Of a stretch of DNA of 64,000 bases, positions 12,356 through 53,657 are shown in pieces. This DNA comes from Phallusia mammillata (taxonomy: Eukaryota): positions 27,094,001-27,158,000 of the forward strand of contig OZ281496.1 in the NCBI GenBank assembly GCA_965637545.1, read 5' to 3'. A model generated the notes under the pieces. The model was not told where the DNA came from, did not search any database, and saw only the letters and a list, made by a program, of their open reading frames with translations. Numbering within the stretch: the stretch's first letter is position 1; every line of letters begins with the position of its first letter. Position numbers and translations under genes: made by a program.

Positions 12356-12363
12356 CCCTATGC

Positions 12364-13245: not shown

Positions 13246-15422
13246 TTAACGGTGGTTGTGCAAAACATGGACGCAAGGGTCTTTACAGAAATGTAGTGCC
13301 AATTCGCTCCACCATGCGTCAGAAAAGGTTTGAAAATTTTCGTCAAACTTGAATATATGATTTGGGTCGTCAGTAATGTCAAGGAATAGCTGGTCATCGA
13401 ACACAACACCATCCCGCTCAAATGCATACACGTACAGCTGTAAAAAATATAAATATGCTATGCTTAGGTATAATTAAAGTTTACATTTAGGCTTGATTTT
13501 ACGTGATATCCCATTTTTTGTGCTACTTTCGCCGCGGCCGTTGCGTCATCGGATGGATTGCTGTCTGTCACGATAAGTATGACTTTTGGAACCCTCTCGT
13601 CTCTCATACCCTTTTCCATGTCTAGAAGGTTGTCCAAAGCGTATTGTATTGCTGCTCCCGTATTGATAAGTGAATCTATCATTAAACACATGGATGATTG
13701 TTGTTGACGCAATGTATTGTTTCATGTTTTAAACTTACCAACTTTGGAAGTTTGCATTCGTTCTTGAAAGATACTCATCATTAGGGTTTTATTGTGTTCG
13801 TACTCGTTAAAGTTAATAACTGACGAGTTGTAAGGTTCAGCTCCATACGATACTCCAGCGAGAAGCGTTGATTCCTCGCCAATATCAATCAATCTAAACT
13901 AACCAGTCGTTACTTGCGTTTGTCGGGTGACTACTTAATACCTGTGGCCTTTACAGGCTCTATAGACTAGGTTAGTGGTTCTCAACTCGTTTTCGGCCAT
14001 GGACCACCGCGCAAGTAAAACTAATATCGTGGACCATTTTATTTTTGAGCAAGATTGAAGTACACATACAAAACTACTATTTGGGCTTGAAACATAATTC
14101 TTTAAAACCGATTTTCCAGAAGTGTGATACAATTATTAACAGCTAACATTTCAATACTCTTTCAATATGTAATATGCAATAATCTCTAGTTTATCGACAA
14201 ACTTAGCGGACGTCCTGTGGACCATCCAAAAAGTCATCATGGACCACTAGTGGTCTATGGACCACCAGTTGAGAACCACTGGTCTAGGTTCAAAGAGTTA
14301 AACGTCTTTCTTACTCTGTGATTGCAAGAAGCACGCGCATAACGATTGAAGCGCTGCTATCTTTGTAGTGGTACAAAACCGCCCAGTCGTGCAACAGATA
14401 TGGTGGACAAGGGCCTAAAATATTGAAAATAGTTTATTTGTTACTGAAAGAAGTTTTACCTATTACATGCGAAGCAAAATGTAGTCCTAGAACTTTTGTG
14501 AGCATTTTGGATTCCATAATGAAATATTTAAATTGTTTCTAACTTCTTTCTGAATAAAGAATAATCAAACCTAATTTTTGTGTGTACATCTCATAAACCT
14601 TACGAGCACAGCATGGTGGATCATATTCCCAGGTGCCGTCAGCTCCACAACCGTTCTGATCTAGTCCTACTGGCCACAGTTCGTAAGTTGGCTCAGTGCA
14701 TTGGTATCTGCAAAGTGAGTTTTCGCAGTGAATGTTTCCATGCGGTAATCTGTTTGGTTGCAGTCGACAGTCATTGAATCCACCTTTTGTACAACAAATA
14801 AAGCCAAGTTCGTTTCCTACTGGAACTGTATTTAGGTTAAAATTTAGTTTAAAAACACCAAGCAGACATTTGTTAGCTTCTATAGTGCTTCTCAGTAAAC
14901 CAACCCGACAAAATTGGGAAAGACACATCAGAGAAGCAAGTGTCAATTCTTGCGTTACACAAATCTCCATCACAGCAACAAGTACAAAATGAGTTGAGTT
15001 GATCTCCATTGCATTGAGTAGATTTGCCTGAAGGCCTATTGTTCTGGAAAAGAAGCATGTAGAAATATAGTTGGGTGTTTTGTTGACTATTTTTCTTTCC
15101 CACCTGTTTTTGGTTGTTTCTGCAGGCCAAGGCCTTCTTGCATCCTTTGCTAACGTACATTTTGTCATTGTGTCGTCTTATTACTGTTTCACAGATGTCC
15201 TAATATATATATATATATATATATGTTTACACATAATGCATTTGACTTGATAAAACTAACACATTAACTTGCCTGAGATCCCTGGCATTGCTGCTCTCCG
15301 TTAAGATTGCATGTTATGAAGCCCAAAGCACTATTACATGTAACACACTTTAGTGACAAAACGGGGGTAAACACAAAAGACAAAATAGCAAAGACGAGCG
15401 ACAGCAAAACTAAATCCTTCAT
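13246..15422 (-). CDS. Array unit 1: secreted Ly6/uPAR - sushi(CCP) - vWA protein, 8 exons, intact
   Basis: MKDLVLLSLVFAILSFVFTPVLS-LKCVTC...; ICETVIRRHNDKMYVSKGCKKALAC; QCNGDQLNSFCTCCCDGDLCN; CRLQPNRLPHGNIHC...WEYDPPCCAR; PCPPYLLHDWAVLYHYK; NTGAAIQYALDNLL...RVPKVILIVTDSNPSDD; VYAFERDG...HFCKDPCVHVLHNHR*. All splice phases are consistent; intron 1 has a GC donor. Confidence 0.88.
13973..14281. mobile_element. hAT-type MITE in a unit 1 intron
   Basis: TIRs tagtggttctcaact / agttgagaaccactg, TSD gactaggt/gtctaggt. It is absent from the homologous sequence at ~19990. Confidence 0.85.
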
Positions 15423-16283
15423 ACTAGCTGACTGTGCTTTCTCATAGTGTTTAGGCTACATAGCACTTTCAAAATCGGCAAAAATGTTTTACACAAAATA
15501 CAGTTGTTGTATGCCCTGGGGTGATTAATACCTGCAGCAAATATGTGTAGTAAATTTCAGATTTTTATGCTCTAAGAACTTCTCTTGCCCCCACTTATTC
15601 TGGCGATTTTTTGGCACTTAGTCTGACGAAGTCTAGTTAAGAGTGTAGTGTTACAACATAAAACATGTCCAACATGTGTTTTTAACCACATCCGGCTAAT
15701 TGCACATGTAACTTGCGTTAAAATATTCTATTATGTGATTCTACGATTCTATTAAATTACCTATGTGCGAGCAAATAGCTTTCTGTGAAATGGGTTTGGC
15801 AGACAGAGTCCAGACCGGTAAAAAATAATTGGTTATCAATTTACATGTCTATGTGAAATCCCAGTATTCTATGATAAGCGCTGCTTTAATTTTTCGTAGG
15901 ACGTGAATAAAGTGGGCGTGTATGTTGTGTAAGTTTGGCCCATGTGATGTGCAGAAACAAATACGCAATGCGTTGCAACTGCTCGGTGTTTCTGTTTATT
16001 TGGGTAACAAAAGACTCTTTCTAGTTTTACGACACTGTTTTGTTGAATTGCAGATACCGAAGTCTAGTCCTTGAAATATAAAATTTCCGCGCTGGTTTGT
16101 TTTGTTTCTTTGTTGTATTTGTTAAAATGTTCATTAGTATATAAAATTCAAATGGAGACAGTGTTAGGTAAATCTGTTTGAGCAAAACTTCTTGTTACAC
16201 AACTAAGACATATAGACTAAGCAATGTGCAATTAGAAACGTGAACCAACACACTCATTGAACAGAAGTCCAGGTATTTCATAT

Positions 16284-19200
16284 TTATGAATGATCGTGTA
16301 ACACGTGTACACACGGGTCTTCGCAAAAGTGGTCAACCAGGTCTTGCCACCAGAAGTCGGGAAACGTTTCAATATTCATGCCGAACTTGAATATATGTTT
16401 TGGGTCGCCGGTAATGTCAAGCAACTGCTCGTCGTCCAAAGTCACTCCGTCCCTTTCGAATGCGTACACGTACATCTACGAGTTATAGTAGAACTAATGA
16501 ATGCAGATCTAGGTTGTCAACGATATATGTTCTGGTATTTACCATCTTTAGTTACTGATTCAAATAGAGTATGTGGGAAAAGCCTGTATACTGGGCGATT
16601 ATAGTCGGACTATGGCATTCTGTAGGCACTGGCCGTAGACCTACATTGATAAAACAATTTATTGAGATGTTTTTCGTTTCTGAAGTAAAAAAAAATGTAG
16701 AGTTTTACAATACTGCTCACGCGTCCTGCTGTAGAACTTTTGCGTAGTTTTTTTTGTGAATTCAAAATGTTTGATGCTGCTTGTAAATGGTAAAATGTTG
16801 TGAGTTAAGGTTGGCGTTAGCCTGTTAACTCACGAGATATCCCAAGTCTCGGGCCCTTTTTGCCGCTGTCTTAACGTCATCGTCTGAGTTGCTGTCGGTT
16901 GTAATGAATATGGCTTTTGGCACTCGTTCGTCCCTCATCCCTTTATCACTCTGCAACAGGTTTTCAATCGCGTACTGAATTGCTGCACCGGTATTGACAG
17001 GAACTCCTAAACAAGGATTGTTCAACAGAAGGACACTTGATCAATTTTCGTTTTGTAATTTTTATAGTTTTAGGCTGAAATCAGGGCAGACTAAAAGCAC
17101 AAGCCCGAAATCTTGTCCAAACTCGATAAAAAATATTTTGCGTCGAAAATTAGTTTGTTGCAAGGTCCGAATCAAGCCTATTTTACTTAAACTTACCACC
17201 ACAAGCCCAAAGCCTGGCTCTACTTATAACTCATGTCGTATTATGCAATGCTGCGCAATTGATTTGTATCACCGAGTGTTAATTTCAATTGAATCTCTGT
17301 CGGAATATGAGTTTTAAACCGTAAGTATTTGTGGAAAGACACAACATAAGTTTTATAGCGTATGTTGCCACACAAACAGGATAGTAAGACTCTACGATAA
17401 CCACCACGTTCATGTACGGATCAGACAATTGGAAATTCTAACCGTTTTCAGTAGGAGTCCTTTTTTCTTGAAAGATTTGCAACATTAGCGTTTTATTGTA
17501 CTCGTAGTCGTTGAAGTTGATGACTGACGATTCGTAAGGCTCTGCACCGTACGACACTCCAGCGAACAATGTAGATTCTGCACTTATGTCAATTATTCTG
17601 AAACAATACGTCATTCTTCATTAAAAATATATCAGTTTTAAAATGTATTATGTAATGCGGTTGAAAGAATTTGAACCTCAGATCAATGTTGTAAGCGGAC
17701 CCAAACTCGACCTGAACCCGAAAGTACAAGTTAGAAATTCGGCCTAAACCCTTCTCGTATTAGGTCCAAAAGTGAAATTAAAATTACCCAGCAATAGAGA
17801 CACAAATTTAAGTTAGGTCCCAATAAAGTCGGTTTGGTTTAAAATAAAATATAACTTACAACTCATGCAGGGCATTCTGCAGTTTACAGAAGAAAAAAAA
17901 TCTATTTGTCGTTATTTGTGCTGCAGTTATCAAATATTAGGTGTACCTGGAAATAGCTTTTGTGTTTAGAAGCTGTACTGACCCGGTAATTGCGGCGAGT
18001 GTTTCCCAACTCTTGACAGAATACTCAGGTTTCGAATGTGACAAAACTATTGAATCGAATAGGGAGTGCGGTGGACAGGGTCCTGTTAATTCAAACAGAT
18101 TATGGAGCAATGATGGGTTTATAACTCTCTTTATTATGAACTAAAAAAGGCTAGTTCGTTAGTAACTACAAATTGAAACTTCCGAGGTTTACCTTTAATG
18201 CAAGGTTTCTGCAGTAATTATTTAAACGCTTAAAATTCTAGCGTCGTTAGGTCAAAAAGAGTTTTTTTTTGTATTGTCAATCGTAAGACAGTTTTGTCTA
18301 TGTATCGGTCTGTAATCCTAGATTATTTACTTTCTTATTCAAATATAATTTATATCTGATCTTTCGGCCAAATTGTTGAGATTTAATTTCATACATATTT
18401 CTTACTGACTGCAGTAAAATATTGCAATATCCGGAGAGCAGTGATCTTCAGATTAAGATCTGCCGAGGTTGAACATCACCTTTATTTAATTTATTTAACA
18501 ATTCTTACGTGCACAACAAGGTGTGTCGAATTGCCAGTTGCCGTCAGCTCCACACACGTTCTGATCTCTTCCTACTGGCCACAACTCATAAGTTTCATCA
18601 GTGCATTGATATTTGCAAACTCCGTTCTCACAGTTGATGATTCCATGTGGAATTTTTCTAGGTGGCGTTGCGCAGTCGTTGAAACCAACTAAAATGTGCA
18701 ATATATGGCTTGGTATTTTGCATAAAACTTACAACAACTTTTTACTAGTTTTAAGATGTGTATGAAGTACTGACGTTGTGGTGATACAGATATGTGTACT
18801 AAGTTTAAACAGGTGTCAGTTCCGACGTTGCACAAATCTCCTTCACAGCAACAAGTACAAAATGAGTTGACTTGGTCTCCATTGCATTGAGTAGATTTGC
18901 CTGAAGGCCTGTTGTTCTGTCAATATATTTATAAACAATTATTTTTACAGAGTTTTTTGCGCCCTTCAGGAAGGCAACAGACGTTTTCTCTTACTTGCAT
19001 TTGGTTGTTACTGCAAGCCATGGTGTCCTTGCAACCTTTTCTAACATACGACTTGTTCTTATACCTTCTTACCACCGCTTCGCAGGAGTTCTGCAAAACT
19101 TTGCCTTTTTAAAAACAGGTTACTAATATTTCCATTCTACTTAACCTGGTTGATATGACATTGTTGTTCTCCTTGGAGGTTGCATTCCTCATTACTTAAG

Positions 19201-19289
19201 GCACGATCACAGGTTATACATTTCAGCCCAGAAGCCACTTGGTGACAACAAGCGAAGGCAACAAGCCAACCCAATGCAACAGTTACCAT
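16284..19289 (-). CDS. Array unit 2: secreted Ly6 - CCP - vWA protein, intact
   Basis: MVTVALGWLVAFACCHQVASG-LKCITC; SCEAVVRRYKNKSYVRKGCKDTMAC; CTCCCEGDLCN; CATPPRKIPHG...WQFDTPCCAR; LFDSIVLSHSK; NTGAAIQYAIENLL; HFCEDPCVHVLHDHS*. Confidence 0.86.
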
Positions 19290-19624: not shown

Positions 19625-20210
19625 AAATCAGAACCTAAAATTAGTCGTTTGCAGGTCAATTTGTTGTTTTCTGTGATCGTTTAACCGACAAAGTTCATTT
19701 TTTTGCAGCTACTGTTTAGTATTCTAGTTTTATTTCTTTGTGCATGAACAAGAACCACAGACATCGTATCCAAGAACGTCATTTTTTGTTAACGATTTTG
19801 CAGCATTTAGTAAAATAAATCATAAAAATACTTTTTTAAGATAAACACTCTTTTGCCACATCTTCAAGTTAACTTGTTAGAGTTGTAAGTGTACTTGCAG
19901 TTTATTTAAACAATGAGTTTTGTTGCACCAGTTGTTTACTTGTTTTGTCGGGTAACTACTTAACACATGTGTACTTTAGAGGCGCTAGAGAGCTTAGGTT
20001 CAAAGAGTTAAACGTCTTTCTTACTTTGTGATTGCAGGGAGCGCGCGCATAACAGTCGAAGCGCTGCTAGCCTTGTAATGGTACAAAACCGCCCCGTCGT
20101 GCAACAGGTACGGAGGACAAGGCATTAAAATAATGAAAATAGTTTACTTGTTCCCGAAAGGAGTTTTACCTATTTCGTGCTAAGCAAAATGTAGGCCTAG
20201 AACAGGGGTC
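19625..20210 (-). pseudogene. Relic of a deleted array unit (unit-4-like 3' flank fused to a unit-1-like vWA exon 5)
   Basis: 19625-19930 matches the unit 4 downstream flank (24795-25080). 19930-20210 matches the unit 1 intron/exon at 13910-14490. The exon acceptor is mutated (ttttaatgcc vs ttttaggccc). Confidence 0.75.
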
Positions 20211-20753: not shown

Positions 20754-23700
20754 TTATGAATGGTCGTGTAACACGTGCACACACGGATCTTCGCAAAAGT
20801 GGTCAACCAGGTCTTGCCACCAAAAGTCAGGAAACGTTTCAATATCCATGCCGAACTTGAATATATGCTTTGGGTCGCCGGTAATGTCAAGCAACTGCTT
20901 GTCGTCCAAAGTCACACCGTCCCTCTCAAAAGCATACACGTACATCTGCGAGTCATAACAGAAATCGTGGATGCAGAACTAGCTTGGTAGATGCTATGGT
21001 CAGTTGCTTACGGCTTTCCTTACTTAGTCAAATATAGTTTGAACGATAAACCTAACTGGGCGGTTATTGTCGGACTATGGCATTTTGTATGCACTTGTAA
21101 ATGTTTTGGATCTAAAAGTAGTTTAATCTTGTTTTGTTGGCCTGTAAAAACGTAAACTTTTACATTATTGCTCAGGTAGACGTACGCGTCCTGCTGAAAG
21201 ATTTTTGTTTAGGGTCTATTATTTAAAATAAAATTATTGCTGCTGGTAATTTGTAAAACATTGTGCGCCATAAGTTGATGTTGTCATTTGCTTGTTGACT
21301 TACCAAATATCCCAAGTCTCGGGCCCTTTTTGCTGCTGTCTTAACGTCGTCGTCAGAGTTGCTGTCAGTTGTGATGAAAATGGCTTTTGGTACTCGTTCG
21401 TCCCTCATTCCTTTATCACTCTGCAGCAGGTTTTCAATCGCGTACTGAATTGCTGCACCGGTGTTAACAGGAACTCCTAAACAATCAAGGATTGTTTAAC
21501 AAAAAGGCCATACGAACGATTTCGTTTCGTAATTTTTATAGTTTTAGGCTGAAATCAGGGCAGACTAAAAGTACCAGCCCGAAACCTATTCAAACCCGAT
21601 AAAAATATTTTGCGTCGAAAATTATTTTGTTGTCAGGCCCAAATCAATACTATTTTACTTAAACTTACCCCCAACCCCGCCAGTAAAACCTTGCTCTACT
21701 TATACACCGTGTTATACAATGTTGTGAAATTGCTTTGTATCACCGAGTGTTAATTTCAACTACACCTATTTCGTGGAAAAACACAACACAACACAACCCG
21801 GTAATAAGTTTTATAGCATATAGTCTTATTAAGGATAATAAGACTTTACGATAATGCCACGACGTTCATATGCAAATCAGACAATTGAAAATTCTAACCG
21901 TTTTCAGTAGGAGTTCTTTTTTCTAGAAAGAGTTGCAACATTTGCGTTTTATTGTACTCGTAGTCGTTGAAGTTAAAGACTGACGACTCGTAAGGCTCTG
22001 CGCCGTATGACGCACCAGCGAACAATGTAGATTCTGCACTTATGTCCAGTAATCTAAAACAATACATCATTCTTCACTAAAAATAAATCAGTTTAAAATA
22101 CATTGTGAAATACAACTTGAAGCCTTGACTTAAAGTTGTACGGGGGCCCGAAACCGAAAGTACACAGCCTCGAAATCCGGGCTAAACTAATTTTTCACAT
22201 TGTTGTAAAATGAACTTTACGTAACAAAAACAGGAGACTATTTGATGCAAAAAAATAAAGTCTAGTTTGAACTGAAATCCACCTACAGTAGCAGTTTTCC
22301 GGTTATTACTGTTCTCTACATCAATACAATTCAAAACCCAGTGTATAAACACTAGGCCAAACAGAATCAACCGTTGTACACAATAGTTTTACGGAATATA
22401 TATTTCACCAAAAAGTTTTGGCACCTTCAGTTCACTGTTTGATGTAGTTTTGTTTTGCAATTGAAAACAATTTAAGCGTACTTGAAACTATGTGTTTAGA
22501 AGCTGTACCGACCCGATAATTGCGGAGAGTGTTTCCAATCTCCTGTCAGAAAACTCAGGTTTCGAATGAGACAAAACTATTGAGTCGAAAAGGAAGTATG
22601 GTGGACAGGGACCTGTTAAACCAAACAGATTATGAAGCAATGATGGGTTTACAAATCTCTTTATCGTAAACCAAATAAAATGGCTTGTTATGTATAAATT
22701 ACAAACTGAAACTTCTTGGATTTAACGTTAATTCAATTTTTCTGCTGTGGTTATTTGAATACTTAGGTTACTGTTTGTATCTAACGTCGTGTTTTTACAC
22801 TGACGCGCGGTTGTTATATCACGTCAAAAAGTAAGCTTTTTCGTATTGTAATTAGTCCACAGCAGTATCTATTATTTAGACGGTAATTTGGTAACTGCAG
22901 TAAAATATTGTAATTTTGGGAGAGCACTGATCGTCAGATAAAGATCTCTCAAATTCAACTTATCTTATAGCTCTTACGTGTACAGCAAGGTGTGTCATAT
23001 TGCCAGTTGCCATCAGCTTTACATCTGTTCTGATCTCTTCCTACTGGCCACAGGCCATAAGTTTCATCAGTACATTGATATTTGCAAACTCCATTTTCAC
23101 AGTTGATAGTTCCATGTGGAAAGTTAGTTGGTGGCGTTGGGCAGTCGTTGAAGCCTACTACAATGTGCAAGTATACGGCTTGGTATTTAGCGAAAGTCAT
23201 ACAACTAAATTTTATTAGTTTTAATATGTACATGAAGCACTGACTCTTTGGCGATGAAGAGACGTGTACTAAGTTTAAACAGGTGTCAGTTTTTTGACTA
23301 ATGTTACATACTTTAATACGTCGGTTTTTCTTGACAGAAATGTTGCAATTTGCAACCAAGTACTGCAGGGCAATACAGATTTGATCGGGGAGCAGTATTT
23401 CAATACTACACCAACCTATCGGTGATGTGGGGACAGATAAAGCGGGAGAACAGTTGTCAAGTCCAGTGTTGCACAAATCTCCTTCACAGCAACAAGTACA
23501 AAGCGAGTTGACTTGGTCTCCATTGCATTGAGTAGATTTGCCTGAAGGTCTGTTGTTCTGTCAACAAACAAATAGTTTTGACAGAGTTTTTTGGCACCTT
23601 TCAGGAAAGCAACAGACGTGTTCCCTTACTTGCATTTGGTTGTTACTGCAAGCCATGGTGTCCTTGCAACCTTTCCTAATATACGACTTGTTCTTGTACC

Positions 23701-23922
23701 TTCTTACCACCGTTTCGCAGAAGTTCTGCAAAACATTGCGTTTTAAAAACCAGATCACCTTTATACATTCTACTGTACCTGGTTAATATGACATTGTTGT
23801 TTTCCTTGAAGATTGCATTCCTCATTACTTAAGGCACGATCACAAGTTATACATTCCAGCCCAGAAGCCACTTGGTGATAACAAGCAAAGGCAAAAAGCC
23901 AAAACAATGCAACAGTTACCAT
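20754..23922 (-). CDS. Array unit 3: secreted Ly6 - CCP - vWA protein, recent duplicate of unit 2, intact
   Basis: MVTVALFWLFAFACYHQVASG-LECITC; CTCCCEGDLCNTGLDNC; CPTPPTNFPHG...WQYDTPCCTR; LFDSIVLSHSK; HFCEDPCVHVLHDHS*. Introns and 3' flank align with unit 2 (15895-16280 vs 20378-20750). Confidence 0.87.
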
Positions 23923-24447
23923 TCTTAAACTTGTTTTCATGTAAACTCTGATAGACACAAAATAATAATCACTTTTTGCCCTATCTATAACTGGCCAGTC
24001 TTTTCGTGTGTACTGACCCTTAGGGTAAACAATTCCGAGCACACCGTATATCTGATTCCTTGAATAAACAAACAAATTAAACATATACGACGCCGAACAC
24101 TACACTTAAGTTACCGAGTCTAAATTTCGATAGAGCGCTCTTTCAAATGGATTGATTTAGGGTAAAAAACGCTTGACTTATATAGGGTGCTGGTCACGAT
24201 ATTAACATGCAAGCGTAGATTTTATGAACGTCGGTACAGTAATAGCCTTAAGACAGTTTTTGACCGGTTCAGTGATTGGTCAAACTGGTTTCGGCAACAC
24301 GTAAAGGGACGACATTAAAATAGCCTTAAGACATTTGAAAAATTGTATTTTTTGGAAGAACGCGTTGCACACATCGCTTTACCCGTATTTCAATAGGTTG
24401 AGGGGCCGCGAGGTTCTACCTCAATCTGTTTTTATATTTGTCCTTTC

Positions 24448-32240: not shown

Positions 32241-32394
32241 CTGCTCAAAATAGGTTTTCTGATTAGATACAAACTCTATTTTGCATTGATAAATGCGAAC
32301 AGCAACTTTATTAAAAGCTAAGATGAACATAAATTCATAACTGGGATCAACCCTGAAGCGTCGATGCAGACCAGCGATCACGGCACACTCATAT

Positions 32395-32493
32395 ATAAAT
32401 CACAGTACGCCAGGCCCATTAAAGGCGTCACACCGAATCAGCCGGGCTGATTCGGTGTGACGCCTTTAATGGGCCTGGCGTACTGTGATTTAT
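32395..32493. repeat. Perfect inverted repeat: 49-bp arms, 1-nt spacer
   Basis: ataaatcacagtacgccaggcccattaaaggcgtcacaccgaatcagcc-g-ggctgattcggtgtgacgcctttaatgggcctggcgtactgtgatttat. Confidence 0.95.
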
Positions 32494-41000: not shown

Positions 41001-41500
41001 TGATTTTTGCAGCCTTTGCTTACATGCATTTGGTTGTTGTATCGTCTTATCACCGTCTCACATGAGTTCTGAAAGGTTAAGTAAGTAACAAAATTCGCAT
41101 TTCAAAGGCTAAGAACGTGTTAATTAGGCCAAAACAACTCAAATGTAAGCCAAGATAAAGCTTGTTTCCCACTTTTTTTTTTAATAAAAACAGCGATAAT
41201 TTCTGCTTGAAAATTGACATTACTTATTATATATTCCCTTCCATTGACGCATAGAAATTTTAAGCAGTCATGACAAAAACAAACACAACTGCTGTTTCGC
41301 GCTTGGAACCAAAACCATCTTGAATTCCTTCTGTAAGTGTTGGTGTACTTAAAATCACTTACTTGATTGTCCAAACATTGTTGTTCTCCTTCCAAATCAC
41401 ATTGTTCAACGCTTGAGGCACCTTTGCATGTAATGCATTTTAGGGCTGAAACGCTTGCAATGGCACAAGCAAAAAGTATAGTAACAACCAATAACTTCAT
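38008..41500 (-). CDS. Array unit 7: secreted Ly6 - CCP - vWA protein, intact
   Basis: MKLLVVTILFACAIASVSA-LKCITC; SCETVIRRYNNQMHVSKGCKNQQAC; CTCCCDGDSCN; CPAPPKSFPHG; LYDFVTLYHFK; NTGAAIQYAVDNMF; HFCDDPCVHVLHDHNQ* (stop 38008). Confidence 0.88.
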
Positions 41501-41955: not shown

Positions 41956-42849
41956 TCAGTTTTTGGGGCCTTCGCTCCCACCGAACGGCGAAGTAACAAT
42001 TGTTTTCCATGTTTCGTAGGTCAGCAAAACGGCCATGAGGTTCGCCGTAACATCAAGTCCGTAAATTGACAGTGGAATCTTTCTGCTTGATTGGGGAAGG
42101 TACTTGTTCACAATAGCCGCAGCAGCGTCCGTCAAAACGCAGATGAGAGTTGTAATTGTTGTGCGTTTTACGATAGACAGGCTAGCTCTGCTTCCATGTC
42201 TTTGCTTAGCGCAATGGAACGGATATAAGAGCAGGAAAAGCATTAACGCTTGACCGATGGCATTAACCGATGTAGCGACAAGGGCAGGCCAAGCGATGTA
42301 GTCGCCCTTGTAACGGCAGCCGCACGCGGTGTGTTCATATGTGTTAAGCACGTTGAAGATTATCCCAGAAAGATGTTGACCCACGACCATCATTATAATA
42401 CTGCTATAACTCAATACTTTAATCAATGTATTTTTAAGGTGCTGAAGTAGCGGGCTCTGATACAACGTCGCTTGTTTGGTCCATAGAAAAAAGTACACCA
42501 GAGAGTTTGAAGTTACCAGTAGTTCTATCGAAATTTTTACCACAACGTTGCACATGGTGGTTTCGCCAGGTAAGAAACCTACGTTGACGACCACTAGAAT
42601 ACTGATAAGAAACGCTAGGACCGATACTGCTGCTACAGAGGCCAGTCGGTAAAGCACATAGCCGCCGTTACTCTTCGAAAACTTTTGGTGTTTTAAGCCG
42701 TAGAACAGGAAAGAAATGAATACCCACGTTGAAAGCATAATACACATGCTGCTTATTACTATCGCACCGATCCATTTTGGCTTTTCGTAGCGTTCCATAT
42801 GTCGTATTTTTAAAGGACTTCTAGCCATCGTGTTGTTTGCAGAGTTCAT
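41956..42849 (-). CDS. Intronless orphan 7TM (GPCR-like) protein A, 297 aa
   Basis: True ATG at 42849 (MNSANNT; the ORF-track start is a GTG). Seven hydrophobic segments, N-terminal N-glycosylation sequon, Cys at the top of TM3 and in ECL2. TM3 end is VYFFLWTKQATLY (no DRY). Confidence 0.8.
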   Translation of the reverse strand: MNSANNTMARSPLKIRHMERYEKPKWIGAIVISSMCIMLSTWVFISFLFYGLKHQKFSKSNGGYVLYRLASVAAVSVLAFLISILVVVNVGFLPGETTMCNVVVKISIELLVTSNSLVYFFLWTKQATLYQSPLLQHLKNTLIKVLSYSSIIMMVVGQHLSGIIFNVLNTYEHTACGCRYKGDYIAWPALVATSVNAIGQALMLFLLLYPFHCAKQRHGSRASLSIVKRTTITTLICVLTDAAAAIVNKYLPQSSRKIPLSIYGLDVTANLMAVLLTYETWKTIVTSPFGGSEGPKN

Positions 42850-44247: not shown

Positions 44248-47151
44248 TTAAAGTTCATGGTCGTGCAAAGCATGGGCACATGGATCTTGGCAGAAATGTT
44301 CTTGTAGGTCCTTCCACCATGTGTCCGGAAAACTGTCAAAATTCTTTCCAAACTTGAATATATGTTTCGGGTCGCCGGTGATTTCCAAAAATCGATCATC
44401 ATCAAAGACTACTCCTTCCCGCTCAAACGCGTACACATATATCTGTGTGTATGAAAGAGTTAGTTTTGAATACCTTGTTTGCATGATTGCTATGGGTAGA
44501 GCATGTGGCACGCTTGCCAAGGTTGGCATTTGAGGTGATTTTTCATGGCATGTTTATATTAAAGTGCTAATTCAAAGTGTTACATTGCTTGTTATCATTG
44601 GTCAATCATTTAATCTTAAAATCTAGCTGACACGCACATATATCTGCTTTCTGTTCACCACTGATATTAGTTGGCACAAACCATAAAAATGTTGCCACGC
44701 GAAGTCATTACAACATAAAAATAACAAGTAAATTGACAAGCGTCGCGTAAAAGGTTGCCGACCCCTGCATGGTGTAAAATTTTGCATGGTGAAGAAAAGT
44801 GTGTGCGCTTGGAGTTTAACAACTCATGATTTTAGCCGCAGCTTTTGCTACCCCGTTATATGACTGGGAACAGCAATATTACTTACAACGCGAAAACGAC
44901 CGTTTTGGTTTTGATAAAGTGAGTTTGCTGAATAGTTGTTTATAATTTATCGCAAATGGGAAATCAAACATTGGTTACAAGAGTTTAATGAAACTATTAT
45001 GTGAACTTACGATGTAACCAAGGTTGCGAGCGTTTTCCGAAGCAGTTTGGACATCATCGTCTGGGTTGCTGTCAGTAAAGATTGAAATTGTTTTCGGCAC
45101 TCGATGGTTTCTCATTCCGAGTTCGGGTCTGAACATATTGTCTATTGCGTACTGGATCGCAGCGCCCGTGTTGACAAGTGTTCCTGAAACAAAACACGCA
45201 AGTCACTTAAAAACGGTTTGCTATTGCTATTCTAGTCTTTATTATGTGCTTGTTTATTGCTTTGCGTACTGCAGCAGCTGTGTGTTATGTTGCAACATTT
45301 TTAGCATGGCTAAAGCTGCTGCCAAACCAAGCAAACACAGTGGTTAACGACACACCAGCTATTATCTCAGAAAATCGAAAGAATATTGTTCTATTTCTTA
45401 AACCCACATCAGGACTGTCTACAAAATTTGTATTGTCCAAGTTTTCTGTATGTGGCGAAATGAACCATTTTGTTCATATATCAGGAAAGCAAATCAGAAA
45501 AGAGTGACATACATCAGCAAAGGGTGACAATTATACTTACAAAAGCGCCGAAGAGTCAACCCTAAAACAACATGACTTACCATCCTGAAAGGTTTGCAAC
45601 CGTTCTCCAAACAGTATGCCGTAGGAATTTATATTATACCCATCCTTAAAGTGAATCACTGATGACTCAACAGGCTCATAGCCGAAAGACAATCCTGCCA
45701 AAATGGTGGATTCTGGACCAACATGGACCGATCTGTATAACACGTTAAACAACAATTAAAGGTTGCAAAAAGTTTGAGCTAAGTGCGTAACGCATTTTAT
45801 TCATTTTTTTAAAACAAAGCATTCTGTTGCCAGAATGTGGCAAAACTTACCCCATAATTTCAGTTAAAGTCCGAATAGCGTTTTCAATGCTACCAGGTTT
45901 GAAGTGATACAAACTGAGAGAATCGTATAGGACGTATGGTGGACAAGGACCTGTAAAGCACACATGGTGTATTTTCCAAGTGAATATTCATTACTAAAAA
46001 TTAACACTTTGCTTACGTGCGCAGCAAGGTGTGTCATATTGCCAGTGGCCGTCAGCTCCACACACATTCTGATCTCTTCCTGCTGGCCATAACTCGTAAA
46101 TTGGTGAAGTGCATTGATATCTGCAAACTCCATTTTCGCAGTAGATTTTTCCGTGTGGAAAACTCTGTGGTGGTGCTGGGCAGTTGTTATGTCCGACTAA
46201 GAAACAAAGTAATTGTTGGTAACGAACGCTGCTCTACTCAGACCAGCGGTTTCCCAAACCTTTACTAGATGGAGTTTCATTGTTAATATAGAAGCCGTTT
46301 GAATTTTACAAATTAAATTATATGGATGGTGCTTGTGGGAAATAAGGGGAAAGCACAGTAAAACAAATTAACCTTGTAGAGATGTGGGGACAGATATAGG
46401 AAAAATGCAGTTGTCAAGTCCAGTGTTGCACGAATCCCCTTCACAGACACAAGTACAGAACGAGTTGACTTCATCTCCATTGCATTTAGTAGATTTGCCT
46501 GAAGGCCTGTCGTTCTGCAACAAACCAATTACATTATTGAAAAGAACAATAGGACGGAGCTATGCTGGAGTGTGTTTCTTTCGACGTATAAAAGTAACGC
46601 ACTAGATTGTAGCAGCATTACAATAACCACTTACAAACAATTTGCTTCACATTTTGTTGACACATGTCTTCAAGTCTATTTCAATGATTTCCTAAGTACA
46701 ATCTTTTTTACTTTGCATCAATACGTCCATTTTCCATCTAATAATTCATTCTAGCACAAATATCTTTAGATATTTACCGGCATTGGGTAGTTTCTGTGAG
46801 GTTTCGGATTTTTGCAGCCTTTGCTTATACGCAACTGGTTATTGTATCTTCGTATCACTGTTTCACATAAGTTCTGCGAAATCAAAGGGCCGTAAACAAA
46901 TATTGCCACTGAAAAACGGTAGTTAACATTTACATAAATTTTATGTGCTGTTTAAATTATCAAAATAGTTTATGATGATTTACATTACGTATTGCACAAT
47001 TGAAATCACTTACTTGATTTTCCATACATCGTTGTTTTCCTTCTAAGTCACATGTCTCAAAGCTCATAGCATTTTTGCATGTGATGCATTTCAGAGCTGT
47101 AACGCTTGCAATAGCGTAAGCAACAAATATACTTACAATCCAGAACTTCAT
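44248..47151 (-). CDS. Array unit 8: secreted Ly6 - CCP - vWA protein, intact, lacks one Ly6 disulfide
   Basis: MKFWIVSIFVAYAIASVTA-LKCITC; LCETVIRRYNNQLRISKGCKNPKPHRNY; CTCVCEGDSCN; CPAPPQSFPHG; LYDSLSLYHFK; HFCQDPCAHALHDHEL*. Confidence 0.87.
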
Positions 47152-48220: not shown

Positions 48221-49150
48221 CTATGCTTGTGCATGAGTCAATCGTCTGAGACCAATTGAATTTCTTTGATCACTCCTCTTATTAAAAGGCGAAATAAGTA
48301 TCGACCGCCATGTCTCATATGTTAGCAGAACAGCAGTGAGATTGGCCGTAGCACTTAGTCCAAATATTGATAATGGAATATGTCCTCCTATGTCTTGAAA
48401 GATACCGTTCAAAACACAAGCGACAGCGTCTGTTACAACGCAAATCAATGTTGCAACTGTTGTGCGTTTTACCATGCCCATACTGGTTTCAGTTTCACGT
48501 CTTTGCGTCGAGCAATATAACGGATACATAAGAAGAAAAAGCATCAATCCTTGTCCTATGGTGTAAAGGGATGATCCAAAAAGGACAGGCCATATATGGT
48601 AATGGTCCACAGAATTACAACCGAATTCAGTCACTGCAAATTTGTTAACCAAATTAAAAGCTATGGCGGAAGCGTGTGTCCCGAAAACCACAAGAACAAT
48701 GCTGATGTAACCTACAATTTTAATCCATCTATGCTGAAGGTGTTCAAGCGTCGGAATTTGATATACAGTTGCTTGCCTTTTCCATAGGAACAGATAAACC
48801 AGAGAGTTTGATGTGGTCAATATTTCCACCGAAAGCTTTGTGTGGATATTGCAAAACTCACTTTCGCTTGTGGTAAACTCTACAAGAAACATAAAGGGAA
48901 TGCAAAGGACAAAAGCGAGGACTGATGCTCCAGCCGCAGTTGCCATTGAGTACAAAACAAATCCATCGTTTCTTCGTGAGAATTTACGGTGTTTAAACCC
49001 ATAGCAAAGCGCAGATGCAAATACCCACATTGAAAGTGGAATACACACACTACTTATCACAACTGCTGCAATCCATGGCGCTTGTTGATGGCGAATGTCT
49101 GAATGAAATTTAATCATACCTTCGTGCGTTGTGTTGTTTACTATCTTCAT
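48221..49150 (-). CDS. Intronless orphan 7TM (GPCR-like) protein B, 309 aa, paralog of protein A
   Basis: ATG at 49150. Shares motifs with protein A: WI.A.VISS.C, TSNSLVY.FLW..QAT.Y, IGQ.LMLFLL.YP, VKRTT..TLICV.TDA, IPLSI.GL..TANL.AVLLTYETW. Confidence 0.83.
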   Translation of the reverse strand: MKIVNNTTHEGMIKFHSDIRHQQAPWIAAVVISSVCIPLSMWVFASALCYGFKHRKFSRRNDGFVLYSMATAAGASVLAFVLCIPFMFLVEFTTSESEFCNIHTKLSVEILTTSNSLVYLFLWKRQATVYQIPTLEHLQHRWIKIVGYISIVLVVFGTHASAIAFNLVNKFAVTEFGCNSVDHYHIWPVLFGSSLYTIGQGLMLFLLMYPLYCSTQRRETETSMGMVKRTTVATLICVVTDAVACVLNGIFQDIGGHIPLSIFGLSATANLTAVLLTYETWRSILISPFNKRSDQRNSIGLRRLTHAQA

Positions 49151-50241: not shown

Positions 50242-53200
50242 TTAGAGGAGATTGTCATCGTGTAAAACATGAACGCAAGGATCAGAGCAAAAATGATCCA
50301 CCATGTCTTGCATCCAGGGTGCCGTAAAGTCCTCCGTGAATTCACCAATCTTAAAGATGTGTTTTGGATCGCCAGTGATGTCCAACAGCTGCTGATCATC
50401 ATACACAACTCCTTCCCGTACATATGCATACACGTAGACCTTAATGAAATGTTAGTGTTAAAATAAGGTAGGTTTATTTCGCTTGGAGAAAAACGACATA
50501 GCGTCACAATTGTACTCAAAACTATCACCAAGCGAAAATATCTGCGTTACGTTGAAACAATATTGAGTGCAAAATAGTTAGGTTTGGTTTGTGTGCTTGG
50601 TTGGCCGACTGGTGTAAAAACGAAAGACGGCATACAGTAATTTTTATAAGTGTCCCCTTGTGTTAAAGGTTTTAGTAAATGAGATGCTTTGGGTTCATTT
50701 GTTGCGAAATTGGAGAATGGAGGATCAATATGGGCGCCTGCAGAAAATTTGACAAAAAAAGAAACAAAGAATCTAGGGCAAATTTATGAATCATGCATAC
50801 TTACGGGGAAGGATTACGATTTTAAGTAATTATTTACATGGTTATAAATTGTATACAGTAGTATTGCGTTGCATAAAACCTAAAAAACATTCTGCCTAGG
50901 AAAAAATTGCGACGTACCATGGTACGCATTCAGTCTGTCGAAAATGCAACAAAACGACAAACCTTTTGAAAACGACACCAGAAACGTTAATAAGACAGGC
51001 ACAGTTAAACTCGCTTGGTTAGTCATATACGGACTTTTTCTACACCACTTTTTAAAGCGTGATACTTTTACTTTCATCAGGTTTTGACAACATTGGTAAT
51101 TTGGAAGTACATTTAAATTTCAAGGGGGAATTGCTCCTTTATACTGTATCGACAATTGACAGTAACTTACTAAATATCCCAAACTTCTTGCGTTCTCAGC
51201 TGCAGTCTTGACGTCATCATCTGAATTGCTGTCAATCACAATAGAAATCGATTTCGGCACGCGGTTGTCTCTCATACCAAGCTCGGACTTAAGTATGTTG
51301 TCCACTGCGAACTGGATTGCAGCGCCTGTGTTGACTGGACCTGCGAAGAAATCAATCAGTCGTTTAAATATTTACTGGTGCATGTGTTACATTTTTATTT
51401 TGGCATCGTTGTTTGAAGTCATAAATACAATTCTATGTTACGTCGCTGTAGCGAATTATTGAAAAGACTTGGCCCCACAAGGCTTTGAAACAGACAGTTA
51501 GAGTTTGAATTGGATGTAAATTGGGGTTGTTTTGGGTGTGTTATATCTATATCTGAATAACATCCACGTTTAAGACCACAAAATTATATTTGGTTCCTTA
51601 AATGGGACTGAAAGGCACAGCACAGCTTACAACCTTGTCCAACGTTTAATGCGCTACAAAACAAGTAGGGAATCATTGCTTTATTTTGTGGAGTTAAGTT
51701 TTTTACCTTGATCGGCAGCTTGCAGACGTTTTCTTGCCAGTTGAGAATACAAAGTTCCGTTATATTCGTAGTCGTTGAAATTAATAACTGAAGCCACATG
51801 AGGTTCGGATCCGTACGACAAAGCCGCAGCCAGTGATGAATCTGGTCCGACGTGGATGGATCTAATTCAAAATCGTTGGTTTACGTTAAAACTTATACTC
51901 CTATACATATTTTGCAACAAAATATTTATTTATTTTTAATATATTTATTGCATGAGCGGCTTTCGAAGCTTACTTCATAAGTTCCGATAGAACGCTGAAC
52001 ATTTCCTCGAAAATTCCAGATTTAAGGTGGTAAAGACTAACATCATCGTAAAGAGCGTATGGTGGGCAAGGTCCTTCAAAAATAAATATATTGGTAATAT
52101 TTAATTGAAACGTCTATCGCCAGAACTGTCAGGCAATCGCGTACTAACTTACTATTTAATTGGTGCGCATATTTATTTATTTATTTTTGAGCAAAAAAAT
52201 CGAGCCAGTATATTTGTGTAGAACGTCAGATGTCATCGTCGACAATAGCACTTCGAAACGTAGTTATGTTCTACACAAATATACTGGTTCTGATTTTTTG
52301 CTCAGATTATTCAAAGCCGTGAACAGTGTACCTACTTTTTTTTGTTCGGTAAAAGCATTGTGCTGTTTGCGTGGTTATTTGACTTCTCAAAGCCATTTTT
52401 CGTGCATACTGTACAGTGTACACTAAGGCACAACCGCGATTGTGGCTATAAATGTTTCTATTTCTTTACACTAAAAACTATAAATGCGACGTACTTGCAC
52501 AACAAGGTGTATCGTATTGCCAGTTGCCGTCGGCTCCACACACGTTCTGATCTCTTCCTACAGGCCACAGCTCATAAGTTTCATCAGTGCATTGATATTT
52601 GCAAACTCCGTTTTCGCAGTTGATGTTTCCATGTGGAAATCTCGTGGGTGGTGCTTGGCAATTGTCATGTCCGACTGAAAAACAAAGAAATGTTGTTTGT
52701 GACTCATGTTATGCTGTAATCTGTCGGTAACGTATATATATCTTGATAGAAATGTTGCAATTTGCTGCCAAATACTGCGGATCCATACTACGGGAAGCAG
52801 TATTTTAATACTACACCAACCTATCGGTGAAGTGGGGACAGATACTGTAGAAGGGCAGTTGTCAATTTCAGCGTTGCAAGAATCTCCATCACAACAACAA
52901 GTACAAAACGAGTTGACTTGATCTACATTACATTGAGTAGATTTGCCTGAAGGTCTGTTGTTCTGTCACAAAACAATAACAAGTGTAAGAAAAATACTTA
53001 TTAACGTACATGAAGTGTTTTCTAAATCATTTACCTGCTGTTGGTTATTGTTGCAGGACATGGCTTGCTTGCAACCTTTGGTTACGTAAATCTTGTCCAT
53101 GTATCTTCTTACTACTGTTTCACATGCATTCTGTTAAAATACGGAACAGGTCAAACTGTTACAATGAAAAGCATAGAATAGCCCTTACATTGTTTCATGT

Positions 53201-53657
53201 CACTCCAGTTATCAAATAACCGCTTCATAAATTTTGCTAGTTAATAAAATATAGATTTTCTTTAAAGTACAAACAAACCTAACTACACTTGGAGCGCAAA
53301 CAAACCCAATTAAAGGGAAACCCTGGCACGAAGTTTGAGAAAGCTATAGTAAAACGGACACTAGTACAATTTACTGCAAATTAAATGTAAGGTTTGGGCA
53401 AAAACTTTACAAATAGTTGCGTGTTATAAAAGTCTGAAGTAGCTGTTTTAAACTGAATGCAGATAAAAAGCAAGATTTTATCATGCAAAGTTTATTATAT
53501 AACTTACCTGGTTAACTTGGCATTGTTGTTCGTCGTTTTGGTCGCATTCTTCAAAGCTGGACGCTCCATGGCAAGTAATGCATTTCAGCGGTGACACCGA
53601 GCCACCAAAACATAACAAAACAGCAAGAGAGAGCAACACAACAGCCAAGAACTTCAT
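50242..53657 (-). CDS. Array unit 9: secreted Ly6 - CCP - vWA protein, intact
   Basis: MKFLAVVLLSLAVLLCFGGSVSP-LKCITC; ACETVVRRYMDKIYVTKGCKQAMSC; CTCCCDGDSCN; CQAPPTRFPHG; LYDDVSLYHLK; NTGAAIQFAVDNIL; HFCSDPCVHVLHDDNLL*. Confidence 0.88.

What the first reader, a model, noticed from the sequence alone, without database searches (positions are those of the whole stretch)
13246..53657. Tandem array of nine genes encoding secreted Ly6/three-finger - sushi - vWA proteins
Seen: nine same-strand paralogs with identical exon/phase structure, eight of them apparently intact, each with a signal peptide and no TM or GPI tail. Known: Ly6/uPAR, CCP and vWA domains are all ligand-recognition modules (complement regulation, adhesion). 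I do not recognise a characterised protein family with this exact three-domain soluble architecture. Inference: a birth-and-death family of diversified secreted recognition or matrix proteins (tunic, adhesive, gamete or immune/allorecognition role).
Basis: partly seen in the sequence, partly recalled or inferred. Interest (0 to 1): 0.9.

Follow-up and report, generated by a model that had tools for sequence, protein, structure and literature searches.

The report
Tandem secreted LU-sushi-vWA gene family
A sea-squirt genome carries nine side-by-side copies of a gene for a secreted protein built from a three-finger (Ly6-like), a sushi and a von Willebrand A domain; the genes are real, at least two are transcribed, and relatives were found only in sea squirts, but nobody has studied the family and its role is still a guess.

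Summary
Nine same-strand (minus) paralogs lie exactly at 13246-53657. Eight have eight exons with splice phases 0/0/1/1/2/1/0. All nine have open reading frames, signal-peptide-like N-termini and no TM or GPI-like tail. RNA contigs confirm six of seven introns of unit 6 and one junction of unit 9.

The domain calls hold:
- vWA: Pfam hit on the window's exon 7; a homolog model matches collagen VI/vWF-A3.
- CCP: Pfam and a PDB profile search on exon 4.
- LU: a family profile hits LYPD1; a pLDDT 90.6 model matches Lynx2/LYPD6/uPAR.

The vWA lacks the DxSxS metal site. Unit 5 is not headless. An in-frame deletion removed only the LU domain and kept promoter-like sequence, ATG, signal peptide and splice donor.

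Relatives were found only in ascidians (Ciona, Phallusia, Clavelina). They carry automatic names such as "matrilin-like", and I found no study of them. The two Ciona genes checked have no paralog within 10 kb, so this array looks like a lineage-specific expansion. Pairwise dN/dS is 0.1-0.35 and most duplicates are old, which points to specialised paralogs rather than an arms-race or allorecognition locus.

Best guess: metal-independent matrix- or ligand-binding secreted proteins. Unchecked scan notes report further arrays of this family elsewhere in the genome.

The parts
13246..15422 (-). Unit 1, 394 aa. Exons 15422-15273, 15199-15104, 15043-14905, 14783-14604, 14414-14315, 13893-13739, 13675-13503, 13437-13246.
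   Evidence: Hand-built model with an open frame. Intron 1 has a GC donor (CAG|GCAAGT). Pfam VWA hits exon 7 at E 6.9e-10. RNA run X1 holds 5% of the sampled words of this region.
16284..19289 (-). Unit 2, 393 aa, 8 exons.
   Evidence: Phase-constrained model. It is 87% identical to unit 3, the youngest pair (dS 0.2-0.4).
20754..23940 (-). Unit 3, 399 aa, 8 exons.
   Evidence: An extra copy of an exon-3 tail lies in its intron 3 at 23246-23314.
25082..28076 (-). Unit 4, 393 aa, 8 exons.
   Evidence: The intron 3 donor is GC (AAG|GCCAGT), and no in-phase GT alternative exists. Splicing here is unverified.
29552..32715 (-). Unit 5, 290 aa, 6 exons: signal peptide, CCP and vWA, without the LU domain. 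New first exon 32715-32643, then 32240-32064, 31654-31555, 31158-31004, 30540-30368, 29746-29552.
   Evidence: The first exon has an ATG and a hydrophobic peptide, ends in phase 1 and uses a G|GTTGGT donor. 32869-32670 aligns with the unit 6 upstream region, 5'UTR and exon 1 start. 32656-32636 aligns with the unit 6 exon 3 end. dN/dS against unit 6 is 0.23-0.27. No coverage of its own in the four RNA runs.
33421..37157 (-). Unit 6, 414 aa, with a Pro-rich LU-CCP linker. Exons 37157-37008, 36812-36717, 36525-36330, 35920-35738, 35583-35484, 35153-35002, 34228-34056, 33615-33421.
   Evidence: Spliced RNA contigs in X1 and X5 confirm six of seven introns. The model was revised accordingly.
38008..41500 (-). 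Unit 7, 391 aa, 8 exons.
44248..47151 (-). Unit 8, 391 aa, 8 exons. It lacks two cysteines, the 'AC' Cys of exon 2 and the middle Cys of 'CCC' in exon 3.
   Evidence: The exon 2 tail changed by about 10 point substitutions in 30 nt, with no frameshift. By alignment to LYPD1 the two lost Cys would be partners of one canonical LU disulfide (inference).
50242..53657 (-). Unit 9, 396 aa, 8 exons.
   Evidence: An X5 RNA contig (word depth 4331) has a loose end matching 52045-52073 exactly, plus the last base of exon 4. This confirms the exon 4/5 junction.
20027..20122 (-). Stray exon 5 copy, 84% aa identity to unit 1 exon 5, between units 2 and 3.
37653..37697 (-). Relic of an exon 8 C-terminal motif, between units 6 and 7.
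55008..55109 (-). Relic of the 3' half of an exon 8, beyond unit 9. Remnant of a tenth unit.
   Evidence: E 1e-11.
41959..42849 (-). Neighbour, not a family member: single-exon orphan 7TM gene A, between units 8 and 7.
   Evidence: Seven hydrophobic segments, 49% identical to gene B. No Pfam family. The ESM Atlas places it with chordate orphan 7TM clusters.
48224..49150 (-). Neighbour: single-exon orphan 7TM gene B, between units 9 and 8.

Best explanation
This is an array of functional genes from a family found so far only in ascidians. Each protein is a secreted, disulfide-rich chain of about 390 aa. It starts with a signal peptide, followed by one Ly6/uPAR-type three-finger (LU) domain closest to LYPD1/Lynx2 and LYPD6. 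A short Pro/Ser/Thr linker leads to one sushi/CCP module. The chain ends with a vWA domain of the collagen VI N-domain / vWF-A3 type and a conserved tail, HFCxDPCxHxLHxH.

Shown: the genes, their splicing, transcription of units 6 and 9, the three folds, loss of the DxSxS metal site, purifying selection on all copies, and origin by local tandem duplication with gain and loss of copies.

Inferred: the proteins act outside the cell as metal-independent binding or bridging modules. The vWA would hold the protein on an extracellular matrix or partner protein. The LU domain, and the variable former-MIDAS face of the vWA, would give each paralog its own partner. The paralogs would then be specialised by sequence and by expression, rather than being a hypervariable recognition system. 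Unit 5 would be a natural LU-less variant and unit 8 a variant with one LU disulfide removed.
For: Genes and splicing:
- Nine collinear exon sets with open frames under one phase pattern.
- Spliced RNA contigs for unit 6 and unit 9.
- Intron positions are shared with the Ciona homologs.

Domains:
- vWA: Pfam VWA on window exon 7 at E 6.9e-10, and on all homologs. The model of the Phallusia homolog matches collagen VI alpha-3 N2 at TM 0.82 and vWF A3. The family profile hits collagen VI, mussel PTMP1 and vWF A3.
- CCP: Pfam Sushi is above cut-off in three homologs. It also matches 4 of the 9 window exon 4 peptides (best E 9.7e-5), and the exon 4 profile hits MASP-2 CCP at E 3.4e-4.
- LU: the family profile hits LYPD1 at E 4e-4 over the full domain with cysteines aligned. 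The AF2 model (pLDDT 90.6) matches Lynx2, LYPD6B, LYPD6, uPAR and erabutoxin. All LU cysteines are conserved in the window units that keep the domain, except the two missing in unit 8.

Secretion: hydrophobic N-termini, no TM segment, hydrophilic C-termini.

MIDAS: 'DxSxS' is replaced by H-x-K-x-x in the window units. The His is invariant in the full-length ascidian homologs, and only the divergent metagenome homolog P0025 keeps DSSSS.

Selection: dN/dS is 0.09-0.37 in LU, CCP and vWA (one CCP pair at 0.52), including units 5 and 8. No window is clearly above 1 outside the linker.

Expansion: the nine units form one clade (99/99), sister to the Phallusia protein, and subclades follow physical order. 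The two Ciona genes checked have no paralog within 10 kb on either side. Relic exons are present.

Different abundance: contig word depth is about 4331 for unit 9 against about 4 for unit 6 in the same run. The tool warns that depth is a poor measure of expression.
Against: - No functional, localisation or binding data exist for any member.
- The tissues of the RNA runs are hidden, so a matrix role is inferred only from domain types.
- The full three-domain fold was predicted for homologs 39-44% identical to the window proteins, not for the window proteins themselves. Spliced sequences could not be handed to the fold tool. The full-length model is only moderate (pLDDT 70.7).
- Only two of the nine units have direct RNA support.
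- Unit 4 depends on a weak GC donor.
- Site-wise positive selection was not tested with a codon model, and no population data were used.
- The low synonymous divergence of exons 3-4 shows that some exchange or constraint complicates the dating of duplicates.
Confidence: 0.6

Rival explanations
1. These are soluble immune or complement-type recognition factors. The CCP-vWA pair would work like the N-terminal half of factor B/C2 by binding C3-like thioester proteins. The LU domain would work like CD59 by blocking pore formation.
For: Foldseek aligns 280-300 residues of the homolog model (CCP plus vWA) with factor B and C2. The ESM Atlas ranks a 'Complement C2 (fragment)' cluster second. The exon 4 profile hits MASP/C1s CCP modules best. 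CD59 is an LU protein (general knowledge).
Against: Factor B binds C3b through a Mg2+-loaded MIDAS. That motif is lost here. There is no serine protease domain and only one CCP. The rmsd of the factor B/C2 alignments is about 13 A, so the domain arrangement is not shared. The LU domain is closest to LYPD1/LYPD6, and CD59 is not among the 50 listed matches. Purifying selection shows no arms-race signal.
Confidence: 0.1
2. This is a self/non-self or gamete recognition locus. The paralogs and alleles would be diversified labels for allorecognition or sperm-egg specificity.
For: It is a tandem multigene array of secreted binding domains with gain and loss of copies. LU proteins such as Bouncer mediate species-specific fertilisation (title and abstract of 10.1101/354688, seen). 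5 of 8 allelic differences in unit 6 change the amino acid.
Against: Paralog dN/dS is 0.09-0.37 with saturated dS, so the copies are old and conserved. Unit 6 alleles differ at only 8 coding positions in the roughly 900 nt covered by the listed RNA contigs. From general knowledge, that is not high for an ascidian. Orthologous genes in Ciona have no nearby paralogs.
Confidence: 0.07
3. These are matrix-tethered Lynx/LYPD-like modulators. The LU domain would regulate a membrane receptor (nicotinic receptor, Wnt co-receptor or the neighbouring orphan 7TM proteins). CCP-vWA would replace the usual GPI anchor by fixing the protein to matrix.
For: The nearest solved LU domains are LYPD1/Lynx2 and LYPD6, both receptor modulators. 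There is no GPI signal. Two orphan 7TM genes lie directly downstream of units 9 and 8 on the same strand. LU-7TM fusion proteins are reported in echinoderms, molluscs and arthropods (PMC13719153).
Against: Only two of the nine units have a 7TM neighbour, and there are no 7TM relics elsewhere in the array. Similarity to LYPD1 is at fold and profile level only (26% identity). There are no co-expression or binding data.
Confidence: 0.12
4. The array is mostly decaying duplicates. Only one or two copies would be functional and the rest young pseudogenes that have not yet acquired stops.
For: Only units 6 and 9 have direct RNA support. Unit 4 has a GC donor, unit 8 lost a disulfide, unit 5 lost a domain, and relic exons exist.
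Against: dS is saturated for most pairs. Even so, all nine ORFs are open, the cysteines are conserved and dN/dS is well below 1. Unit 8 lost both partners of one disulfide rather than one, which suggests continued selection.
Confidence: 0.06

Closest known systems
Uncharacterised ascidian homologs: Ciona intestinalis XP_009862474 'matrilin-2' / LOC100175501 and 'matrilin-3-like'; C. savignyi H2ZPS8 and H2YH32; Phallusia mammillata 'MUP-4-like'; Clavelina lepadiformis unnamed proteins
   Same: They share the signal peptide, LU, CCP, vWA and C-terminal HFCxDPCxH architecture. Length is 386-396 aa for most (range 386-452), cysteines are conserved and intron positions are shared. Identity to the window units is 27-44%.
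   Different: The two Ciona intestinalis genes checked have no paralog within 10 kb on either side, whereas the window holds nine in tandem. Their names are automatic and wrong in detail: they have no EGF or coiled coil as matrilins do, and no TM as MUP-4 does. I found no experimental study of them.
LYPD1/Lynx2, LYPD6/6B and other Ly6/uPAR three-finger proteins
   Same: They share the three-finger fold (TM 0.64-0.72 by target), the LxCxxC start and the CCxxxxCN end, and all canonical cysteines align.
   Different: The known members are small single-domain proteins, usually GPI-anchored or free. Here the LU domain has two or more extra cysteines (a CCC triplet and a Cys after CN). It is fused to CCP-vWA and has no GPI signal.
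Collagen VI alpha-3 N-domains, vWF A3, matrilin A domains, mussel byssus PTMP1
   Same: These are the best sequence and structure matches of the vWA. Cysteines near both ends of the domain recall the terminal disulfide clamp of the vWF A domains (general knowledge).
   Different: There is a single vWA with no collagenous, EGF or coiled-coil parts. The MIDAS Asp is replaced by an invariant His, and the Ser positions are lost in the window units.
Complement factor B / C2 (CCP-vWA-serine protease)
   Same: A CCP module sits directly N-terminal to a vWA, and Foldseek aligns both together.
   Different: There is one CCP instead of three, no protease domain and no MIDAS. An LU domain is added.

Membership tests
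Ly6/uPAR (LU, three-finger) superfamily | Cysteine framework: N-terminal LxCxxC, 8-10 framework Cys, C-terminal CCxxxxCN | tested here: met
   Present in all eight LU-bearing units, except that unit 8 lacks one pair. The family profile aligns end to end with LYPD1 at E 4e-4. Single-sequence Pfam hits are below threshold.
Ly6/uPAR (LU, three-finger) superfamily | Three-finger beta fold | tested here: met
   The AF2 model of the homolog LU domain has pLDDT 90.6. The top Foldseek PDB matches are all three-finger proteins: Lynx2, LYPD6/6B, uPAR and snake toxins. This was tested on Phallusia/Ciona homologs, not on a window protein.
Sushi / CCP / SCR module | About 60 aa, four framework Cys, conserved Trp and Pro/Gly, usually one phase 1-1 exon | tested here: met
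   Exon 4 is a single phase 1-1 exon of 177-183 nt. The C..C..C..W..C pattern is invariant. Pfam Sushi is above cut-off in three homologs and matches 4 of 9 window exons at E<0.1, best 9.7e-5. The exon 4 profile hits MASP-2 CCP at E 3.4e-4. It carries an extra Cys pair.
[quoted passage not shown] | Alpha/beta Rossmann-like vWA fold | tested here: met
   Pfam VWA scores 39.8 bits on window exon 7 alone and 45-67 bits on the four full-length homologs. Foldseek gives TM 0.82 to collagen VI alpha-3 N2.
[quoted passage not shown] | MIDAS metal site DxSxS...T...D (defines the metal-dependent subclass, not the fold) | tested here: not met
   The DxSxS position reads H-x-K-x-x in the window units and H-x-S/T-x-x in Ciona. 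The later T and D positions are kept.
Matrilins (the automatic name of the Ciona homologs) | vWA domain(s) plus EGF repeats plus a C-terminal coiled coil | tested here: not met
   No Pfam hit for EGF or the matrilin coiled coil. The proteins end right after the vWA.
Complement factor B / C2 | Three CCPs, a MIDAS-bearing vWA and a trypsin-like protease domain | tested here: not met
   One CCP, no MIDAS and no protease domain.
GPI-anchored Ly6 proteins | C-terminal hydrophobic GPI-attachment signal | tested here: not met
   The mean hydropathy of the last 20 residues is -1.3 to +0.2, and the proteins end in a polar His-rich motif. Only a hydropathy calculation was used, not a dedicated predictor.

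The most novel reading that the evidence does not exclude
The LU-CCP-vWA proteins are matrix-anchored, Lynx/LYPD-like ligands that evolved together with the orphan 7TM receptors encoded next to units 8 and 9. This would be a split, two-gene version of the LU-GPCR fusion receptors seen in echinoderms, molluscs and arthropods. The expanded array would encode a combinatorial extracellular signalling code specific to ascidians.
Probability: 0.07. Interest if true: 0.8.

Novelty: new variant of a known kind. Interest (0 to 1): 0.45.

Why it matters
All three domains are well known. Their combination in one secreted chain is not described in the literature I could search. A 2026 survey of invertebrate LU architectures did not include tunicates (PMC13719153). 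The family appears restricted to ascidians and is strongly expanded in this species: nine genes here, with further arrays reported by unchecked notes of this scan.

The array offers natural variants for dissecting function: an LU-less copy, a copy missing one disulfide, and a copy with a long proline-rich linker. One member gave an RNA contig of very high word depth in one run, which makes it a tractable candidate for a major secreted product such as tunic, adhesive or blood-plasma protein.

It also corrects misleading automatic names ("matrilin", "MUP-4-like", "P-selectin-like").

Tried and rejected
- **Spliced window proteins could not be tested directly.** They have no reference form, so Pfam, fold and database searches were run on single exons and on public homologs.
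- **Database reach was limited.** The exon 8 profile search of 1.84 billion representatives gave only 18 hits. Most were exon-sized ORFs from raw-read assemblies, and no annotated protein of this species turned up.
- **Single-sequence Pfam on the LU regions** gave only sub-threshold hits to the Ly6 clan. The LU call therefore rests on the profile search and the fold.
- **The search for exons 1-3 upstream of unit 5** found nothing. That led to the fused signal-peptide exon instead.
- **The idea that unit 5 is an alternative cassette spliced to unit 6 exons 1-3** found no support. The listed RNA contigs show no such joint, and unit 5 has its own start. Absence from contigs is weak evidence.
- **My first automated unit 6 model was wrong** at the exon 3/4 boundary. 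RNA corrected it.
- **Literature searches** for the architecture, for Ciona 'matrilin' and for the accession numbers found no study that I could tie to the family. Ciona KH.L132.4 'matrilin-2' is expressed in larval tail-tip epidermis (PMC8495957), but I could not link it to XP_009862474.
- **A frameshift explanation for the odd exon 2 tail of unit 8** was rejected. The DNA alignment shows only substitutions.
- **A mismatch count** was mis-registered and is not used.
Full report
**1. The observation**

The window has about 37% G+C and no N runs. Using the exon-sized ORFs of the first copy as queries, tblastn finds nine collinear sets of hits. All lie on the minus strand between 13246 and 53657. 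I built unit 1 by hand from the sequence: eight exons and 394 aa, with a GC-AG first intron whose donor is CAG|GCAAGT.

I then modelled the other units under the same splice-phase pattern (0,0,1,1,2,1,0), requiring AG acceptors, GT/GC donors and open frames. Eight units gave complete ORFs.

Paralogs are 49-87% identical in protein. Every unit has a hydrophobic N-terminal core. None has a TM-grade segment later or a hydrophobic C-terminus.

**2. Transcription**

Public RNA runs of the same organism (names coded) hold 5-11% of the sampled words of the regions tested. I laid four runs on 31200-37199.

- Contigs from X1 and X5 join 37008/36812, 36717/36525, 36330/35920, 35738/35583, 35484/35153 and 34056/33615. 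All have GT..AG ends on the minus strand. That is six of the seven introns of unit 6.
- The 36330/35920 joint corrected my model. Unit 6 has a 30-residue proline-rich linker and is 414 aa.
- Introns and spacers had zero depth, apart from repeat-like elements around 31800-32600.
- An X5 contig of word depth 4331 overlapped the conserved end of unit 5 exon 4. Its loose end matches unit 9 exon 5 (52045-52073) exactly, plus the unit 9-specific last base of exon 4. It is therefore spliced unit 9 mRNA.
- Unit 6 contigs have a depth of about 4. The tool warns that depth is a poor measure of expression, so I take only that unit 9 is transcribed and probably much more abundant.

Units 1-5, 7 and 8 have no direct junction evidence.

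**3. Domains**

*On window sequence.* Exon 7 alone hits Pfam VWA at 39.8 bits, E 6.9e-10. Exon 4 is a single phase 1-1 exon with the C..C..C..W..C pattern invariant across the nine copies. Four of the nine exon 4 peptides hit Pfam Sushi (best E 9.7e-5), and their profile hits MASP-2 CCP modules at E 3.4e-4. Exon 3 gives a weak hit to UPAR_LY6_2 (E 0.008).

*On public homologs.* Spliced proteins could not be passed to the tools, so I looked for public homologs. A profile of the nine exon 8 peptides, searched against 1.84 billion representatives, gave 18 hits. Four were full-length proteins of 386-446 aa. These and further hits are ascidian proteins:
- Ciona intestinalis 'matrilin-2' / LOC100175501 and 'matrilin-3-like'.
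- C. savignyi H2ZPS8 and H2YH32.
- Phallusia mammillata 'MUP-4-like'.
- Clavelina lepadiformis unnamed proteins.
- One metagenome protein.

They align with the window proteins over their whole length at 27-44% identity, with all cysteines conserved. Pfam finds VWA in all of them and Sushi above cut-off in three.

*Folds.*
- An AF2 model of the Phallusia protein (pLDDT 70.7) matches collagen VI alpha-3 N2/N5 and vWF A3 at TM up to 0.82. Its CCP plus vWA also aligns with factor B/C2.
- The N-terminal domain profile hits LYPD1 end to end at E 4e-4, and LYPD6 next.
- The N-terminal domain's own AF2 model (pLDDT 90.6) has only three-finger proteins among its top matches: Lynx2, LYPD6B, LYPD6, uPAR and erabutoxin.

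The LU-CCP-vWA reading is therefore correct.

**4. Notable features**

- **No MIDAS.** Where collagen VI and the divergent homolog P0025 have DxSxS, the full-length ascidian homologs have an invariant His, and the window units read H-x-K-x-x. Metal-dependent binding of the integrin or factor B type is unlikely.
- **Terminal cysteines.** Two Cys precede the vWA (CCARPCPP) and two follow it (HFCxDPC). This suggests a clamp of the termini as in the vWF A domains (inference).
- **His-rich tail.** The tail HxLHxH is conserved across ascidians. Its role is unknown.
- **Unit 8.** It lacks two cysteines, one in exon 2 and one in exon 3. By alignment to LYPD1, these would be the two partners of one canonical LU disulfide. 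The exon 2 change is a cluster of substitutions, not a frameshift.
- **Unit 5 is not headless.**
  - At 32715-32643 there is an ATG and a hydrophobic peptide (MQCFTSVLLCCSAFLYVAG...). The 73-nt exon ends in phase 1 at a G|GTTGGT donor, the same donor as exon 3 of units 1, 3, 6 and 9.
  - The region 32869-32670 aligns with the unit 6 upstream region, 5'UTR and start of exon 1. The region 32656-32636 aligns with the end of unit 6 exon 3.
  - An in-frame deletion thus removed just the LU domain and left a 290-aa ORF of signal peptide, CCP and vWA. Its dN/dS against unit 6 is 0.23-0.27.
  - The listed RNA joints do not link unit 6 exon 3 to unit 5 exon 4. Unit 5 had no coverage of its own. This weakly argues against the 'alternative cassette' idea of note s1-351811.

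**5. Evolution**

- In a maximum-likelihood tree the nine units form one clade (99/99), sister to the Phallusia protein. The subclades (1-4), (5,6) and (7-9) follow physical order, as expected for local tandem duplication.
- The two Ciona genes checked are on different chromosomes and have no paralog within 10 kb. They share the intron positions.
- Four relic exon copies show loss as well as gain.
- Nei-Gojobori dN/dS is 0.09-0.37 in all three domains for all pairs where dS can be estimated, apart from one CCP pair at 0.52. dS is saturated for most pairs in the vWA. Only units 2/3 (dS 0.2-0.4) and 5/6 (about 0.75) are younger.
- Sliding windows show pN/pS near or above 1 only in the inter-domain linker, plus one small-count window.
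- Exons 3-4 have clearly lower synonymous difference (0.44-0.50) than exons 1 and 5-8 (0.75-0.84). This points to gene conversion or nucleotide-level constraint there.
- The most variable protein parts are the signal peptide and exons 5-6. Exons 5-6 encode the first half of the vWA, including the former MIDAS loop.
- Unit 6 RNA alleles differ from the reference at 8 coding positions, 5 of them non-synonymous.

None of this looks like an arms-race or allorecognition locus, although site models and population data are lacking.

**6. Context**

- Two single-exon orphan 7TM genes, 49% identical to each other, lie between units 9/8 and 8/7 on the same strand. They have no Pfam family, and the ESM Atlas places them with chordate orphan 7TM clusters of GPCR-like fold. 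This confirms the existence of the genes in note s1-351726. Only two units have such a neighbour.
- Notes s1-349170 and s1-361547 report further LU-CCP-vWA arrays in this genome. I could not check them.
- AFDB cluster and ESM Atlas searches found the architecture only in ascidian entries (C. savignyi; a chordate 'P-selectin-like' cluster). Other hits were generic vWA proteins.

**7. Literature**

Searches for the architecture, for Ciona 'matrilin' and for the accession numbers found no study that I could tie to this family. A 2026 survey of invertebrate LU architectures lists LU combined with Kunitz, C1q, fibrinogen, Ig, MAM and 7TM domains, and its figure legend also names VWA and VWC domains. 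It did not analyse tunicates (PMC13719153). Ciona KH.L132.4 'matrilin-2' is expressed in tail-tip and trunk epidermis of larvae (PMC8495957), but I could not link it to this family.

**8. Verdict**

This is a real gene family with at least two transcribed members, and its relatives were found only in ascidians. It has a domain combination that I did not find described in the literature, and it is locally expanded to nine intact ORFs.

The most likely role is extracellular, metal-independent matrix or partner binding, with paralogs specialised in sequence and expression. The matrix-tethered LU-modulator idea is the most interesting alternative. The family is new as an architecture and a family, but it is built from familiar parts and has no functional data, so interest is moderate.

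Noticed in passing
window 32395-32493: A 99-nt near-perfect palindrome (48-bp stem, 3-nt loop), single copy in the window. Short RNA contigs over it reach word depths of about 50-600 in all four RNA runs and have many different loose ends. It may be a dispersed hairpin element or a small-RNA source.
   Followed up: partly
window 13940-14300 and 31943-32057: A MITE-like element with inverted ends (…GGTTCTCAACTGGTGGTCC… / …GTTGAGAACCACT…) sits in intron 5 of unit 1. A 79%-identical partial copy lies in intron 4 of unit 5. RNA contigs with unrelated loose ends overlap the second copy.
   Followed up: partly
window 41959-42849 and 48224-49150 (minus strand): Two single-exon orphan 7TM genes, 49% identical, interleaved with units 7-9. 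They have no Pfam family, and the ESM Atlas places them with chordate orphan 7TM clusters of GPCR-like fold.
   Followed up: partly
exons 3 and 4 of all units: The synonymous difference among paralogs is much lower in exons 3-4 (0.44-0.50) than in the other exons (0.75-0.84). This suggests exon-limited gene conversion or constraint at the nucleotide level.
   Followed up: partly
window 27581 (unit 4 intron 3 donor) and 15272 (unit 1 intron 1 donor): Two GC donors. The unit 1 donor has the strong CAG|GCAAGT context. The unit 4 donor is the weaker AAG|GCCAGT, where unit 2 has GTCAGT at the corresponding site. Read-through in unit 4 would give an LU-only secreted protein ending 7 codons later.
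   Followed up: no
window 23246-23314: A second copy of an exon 3 tail, similar to the exon 3 end of unit 2, lies inside intron 3 of unit 3. It could serve as an alternative exon end.
   Followed up: no
window 1-13000: Earlier notes of the scan place an array of AA15 LPMO genes directly beside this array. I did not examine it. The neighbourhood of cellulose/chitin-active enzymes and secreted vWA proteins may be coincidental.
   Followed up: no
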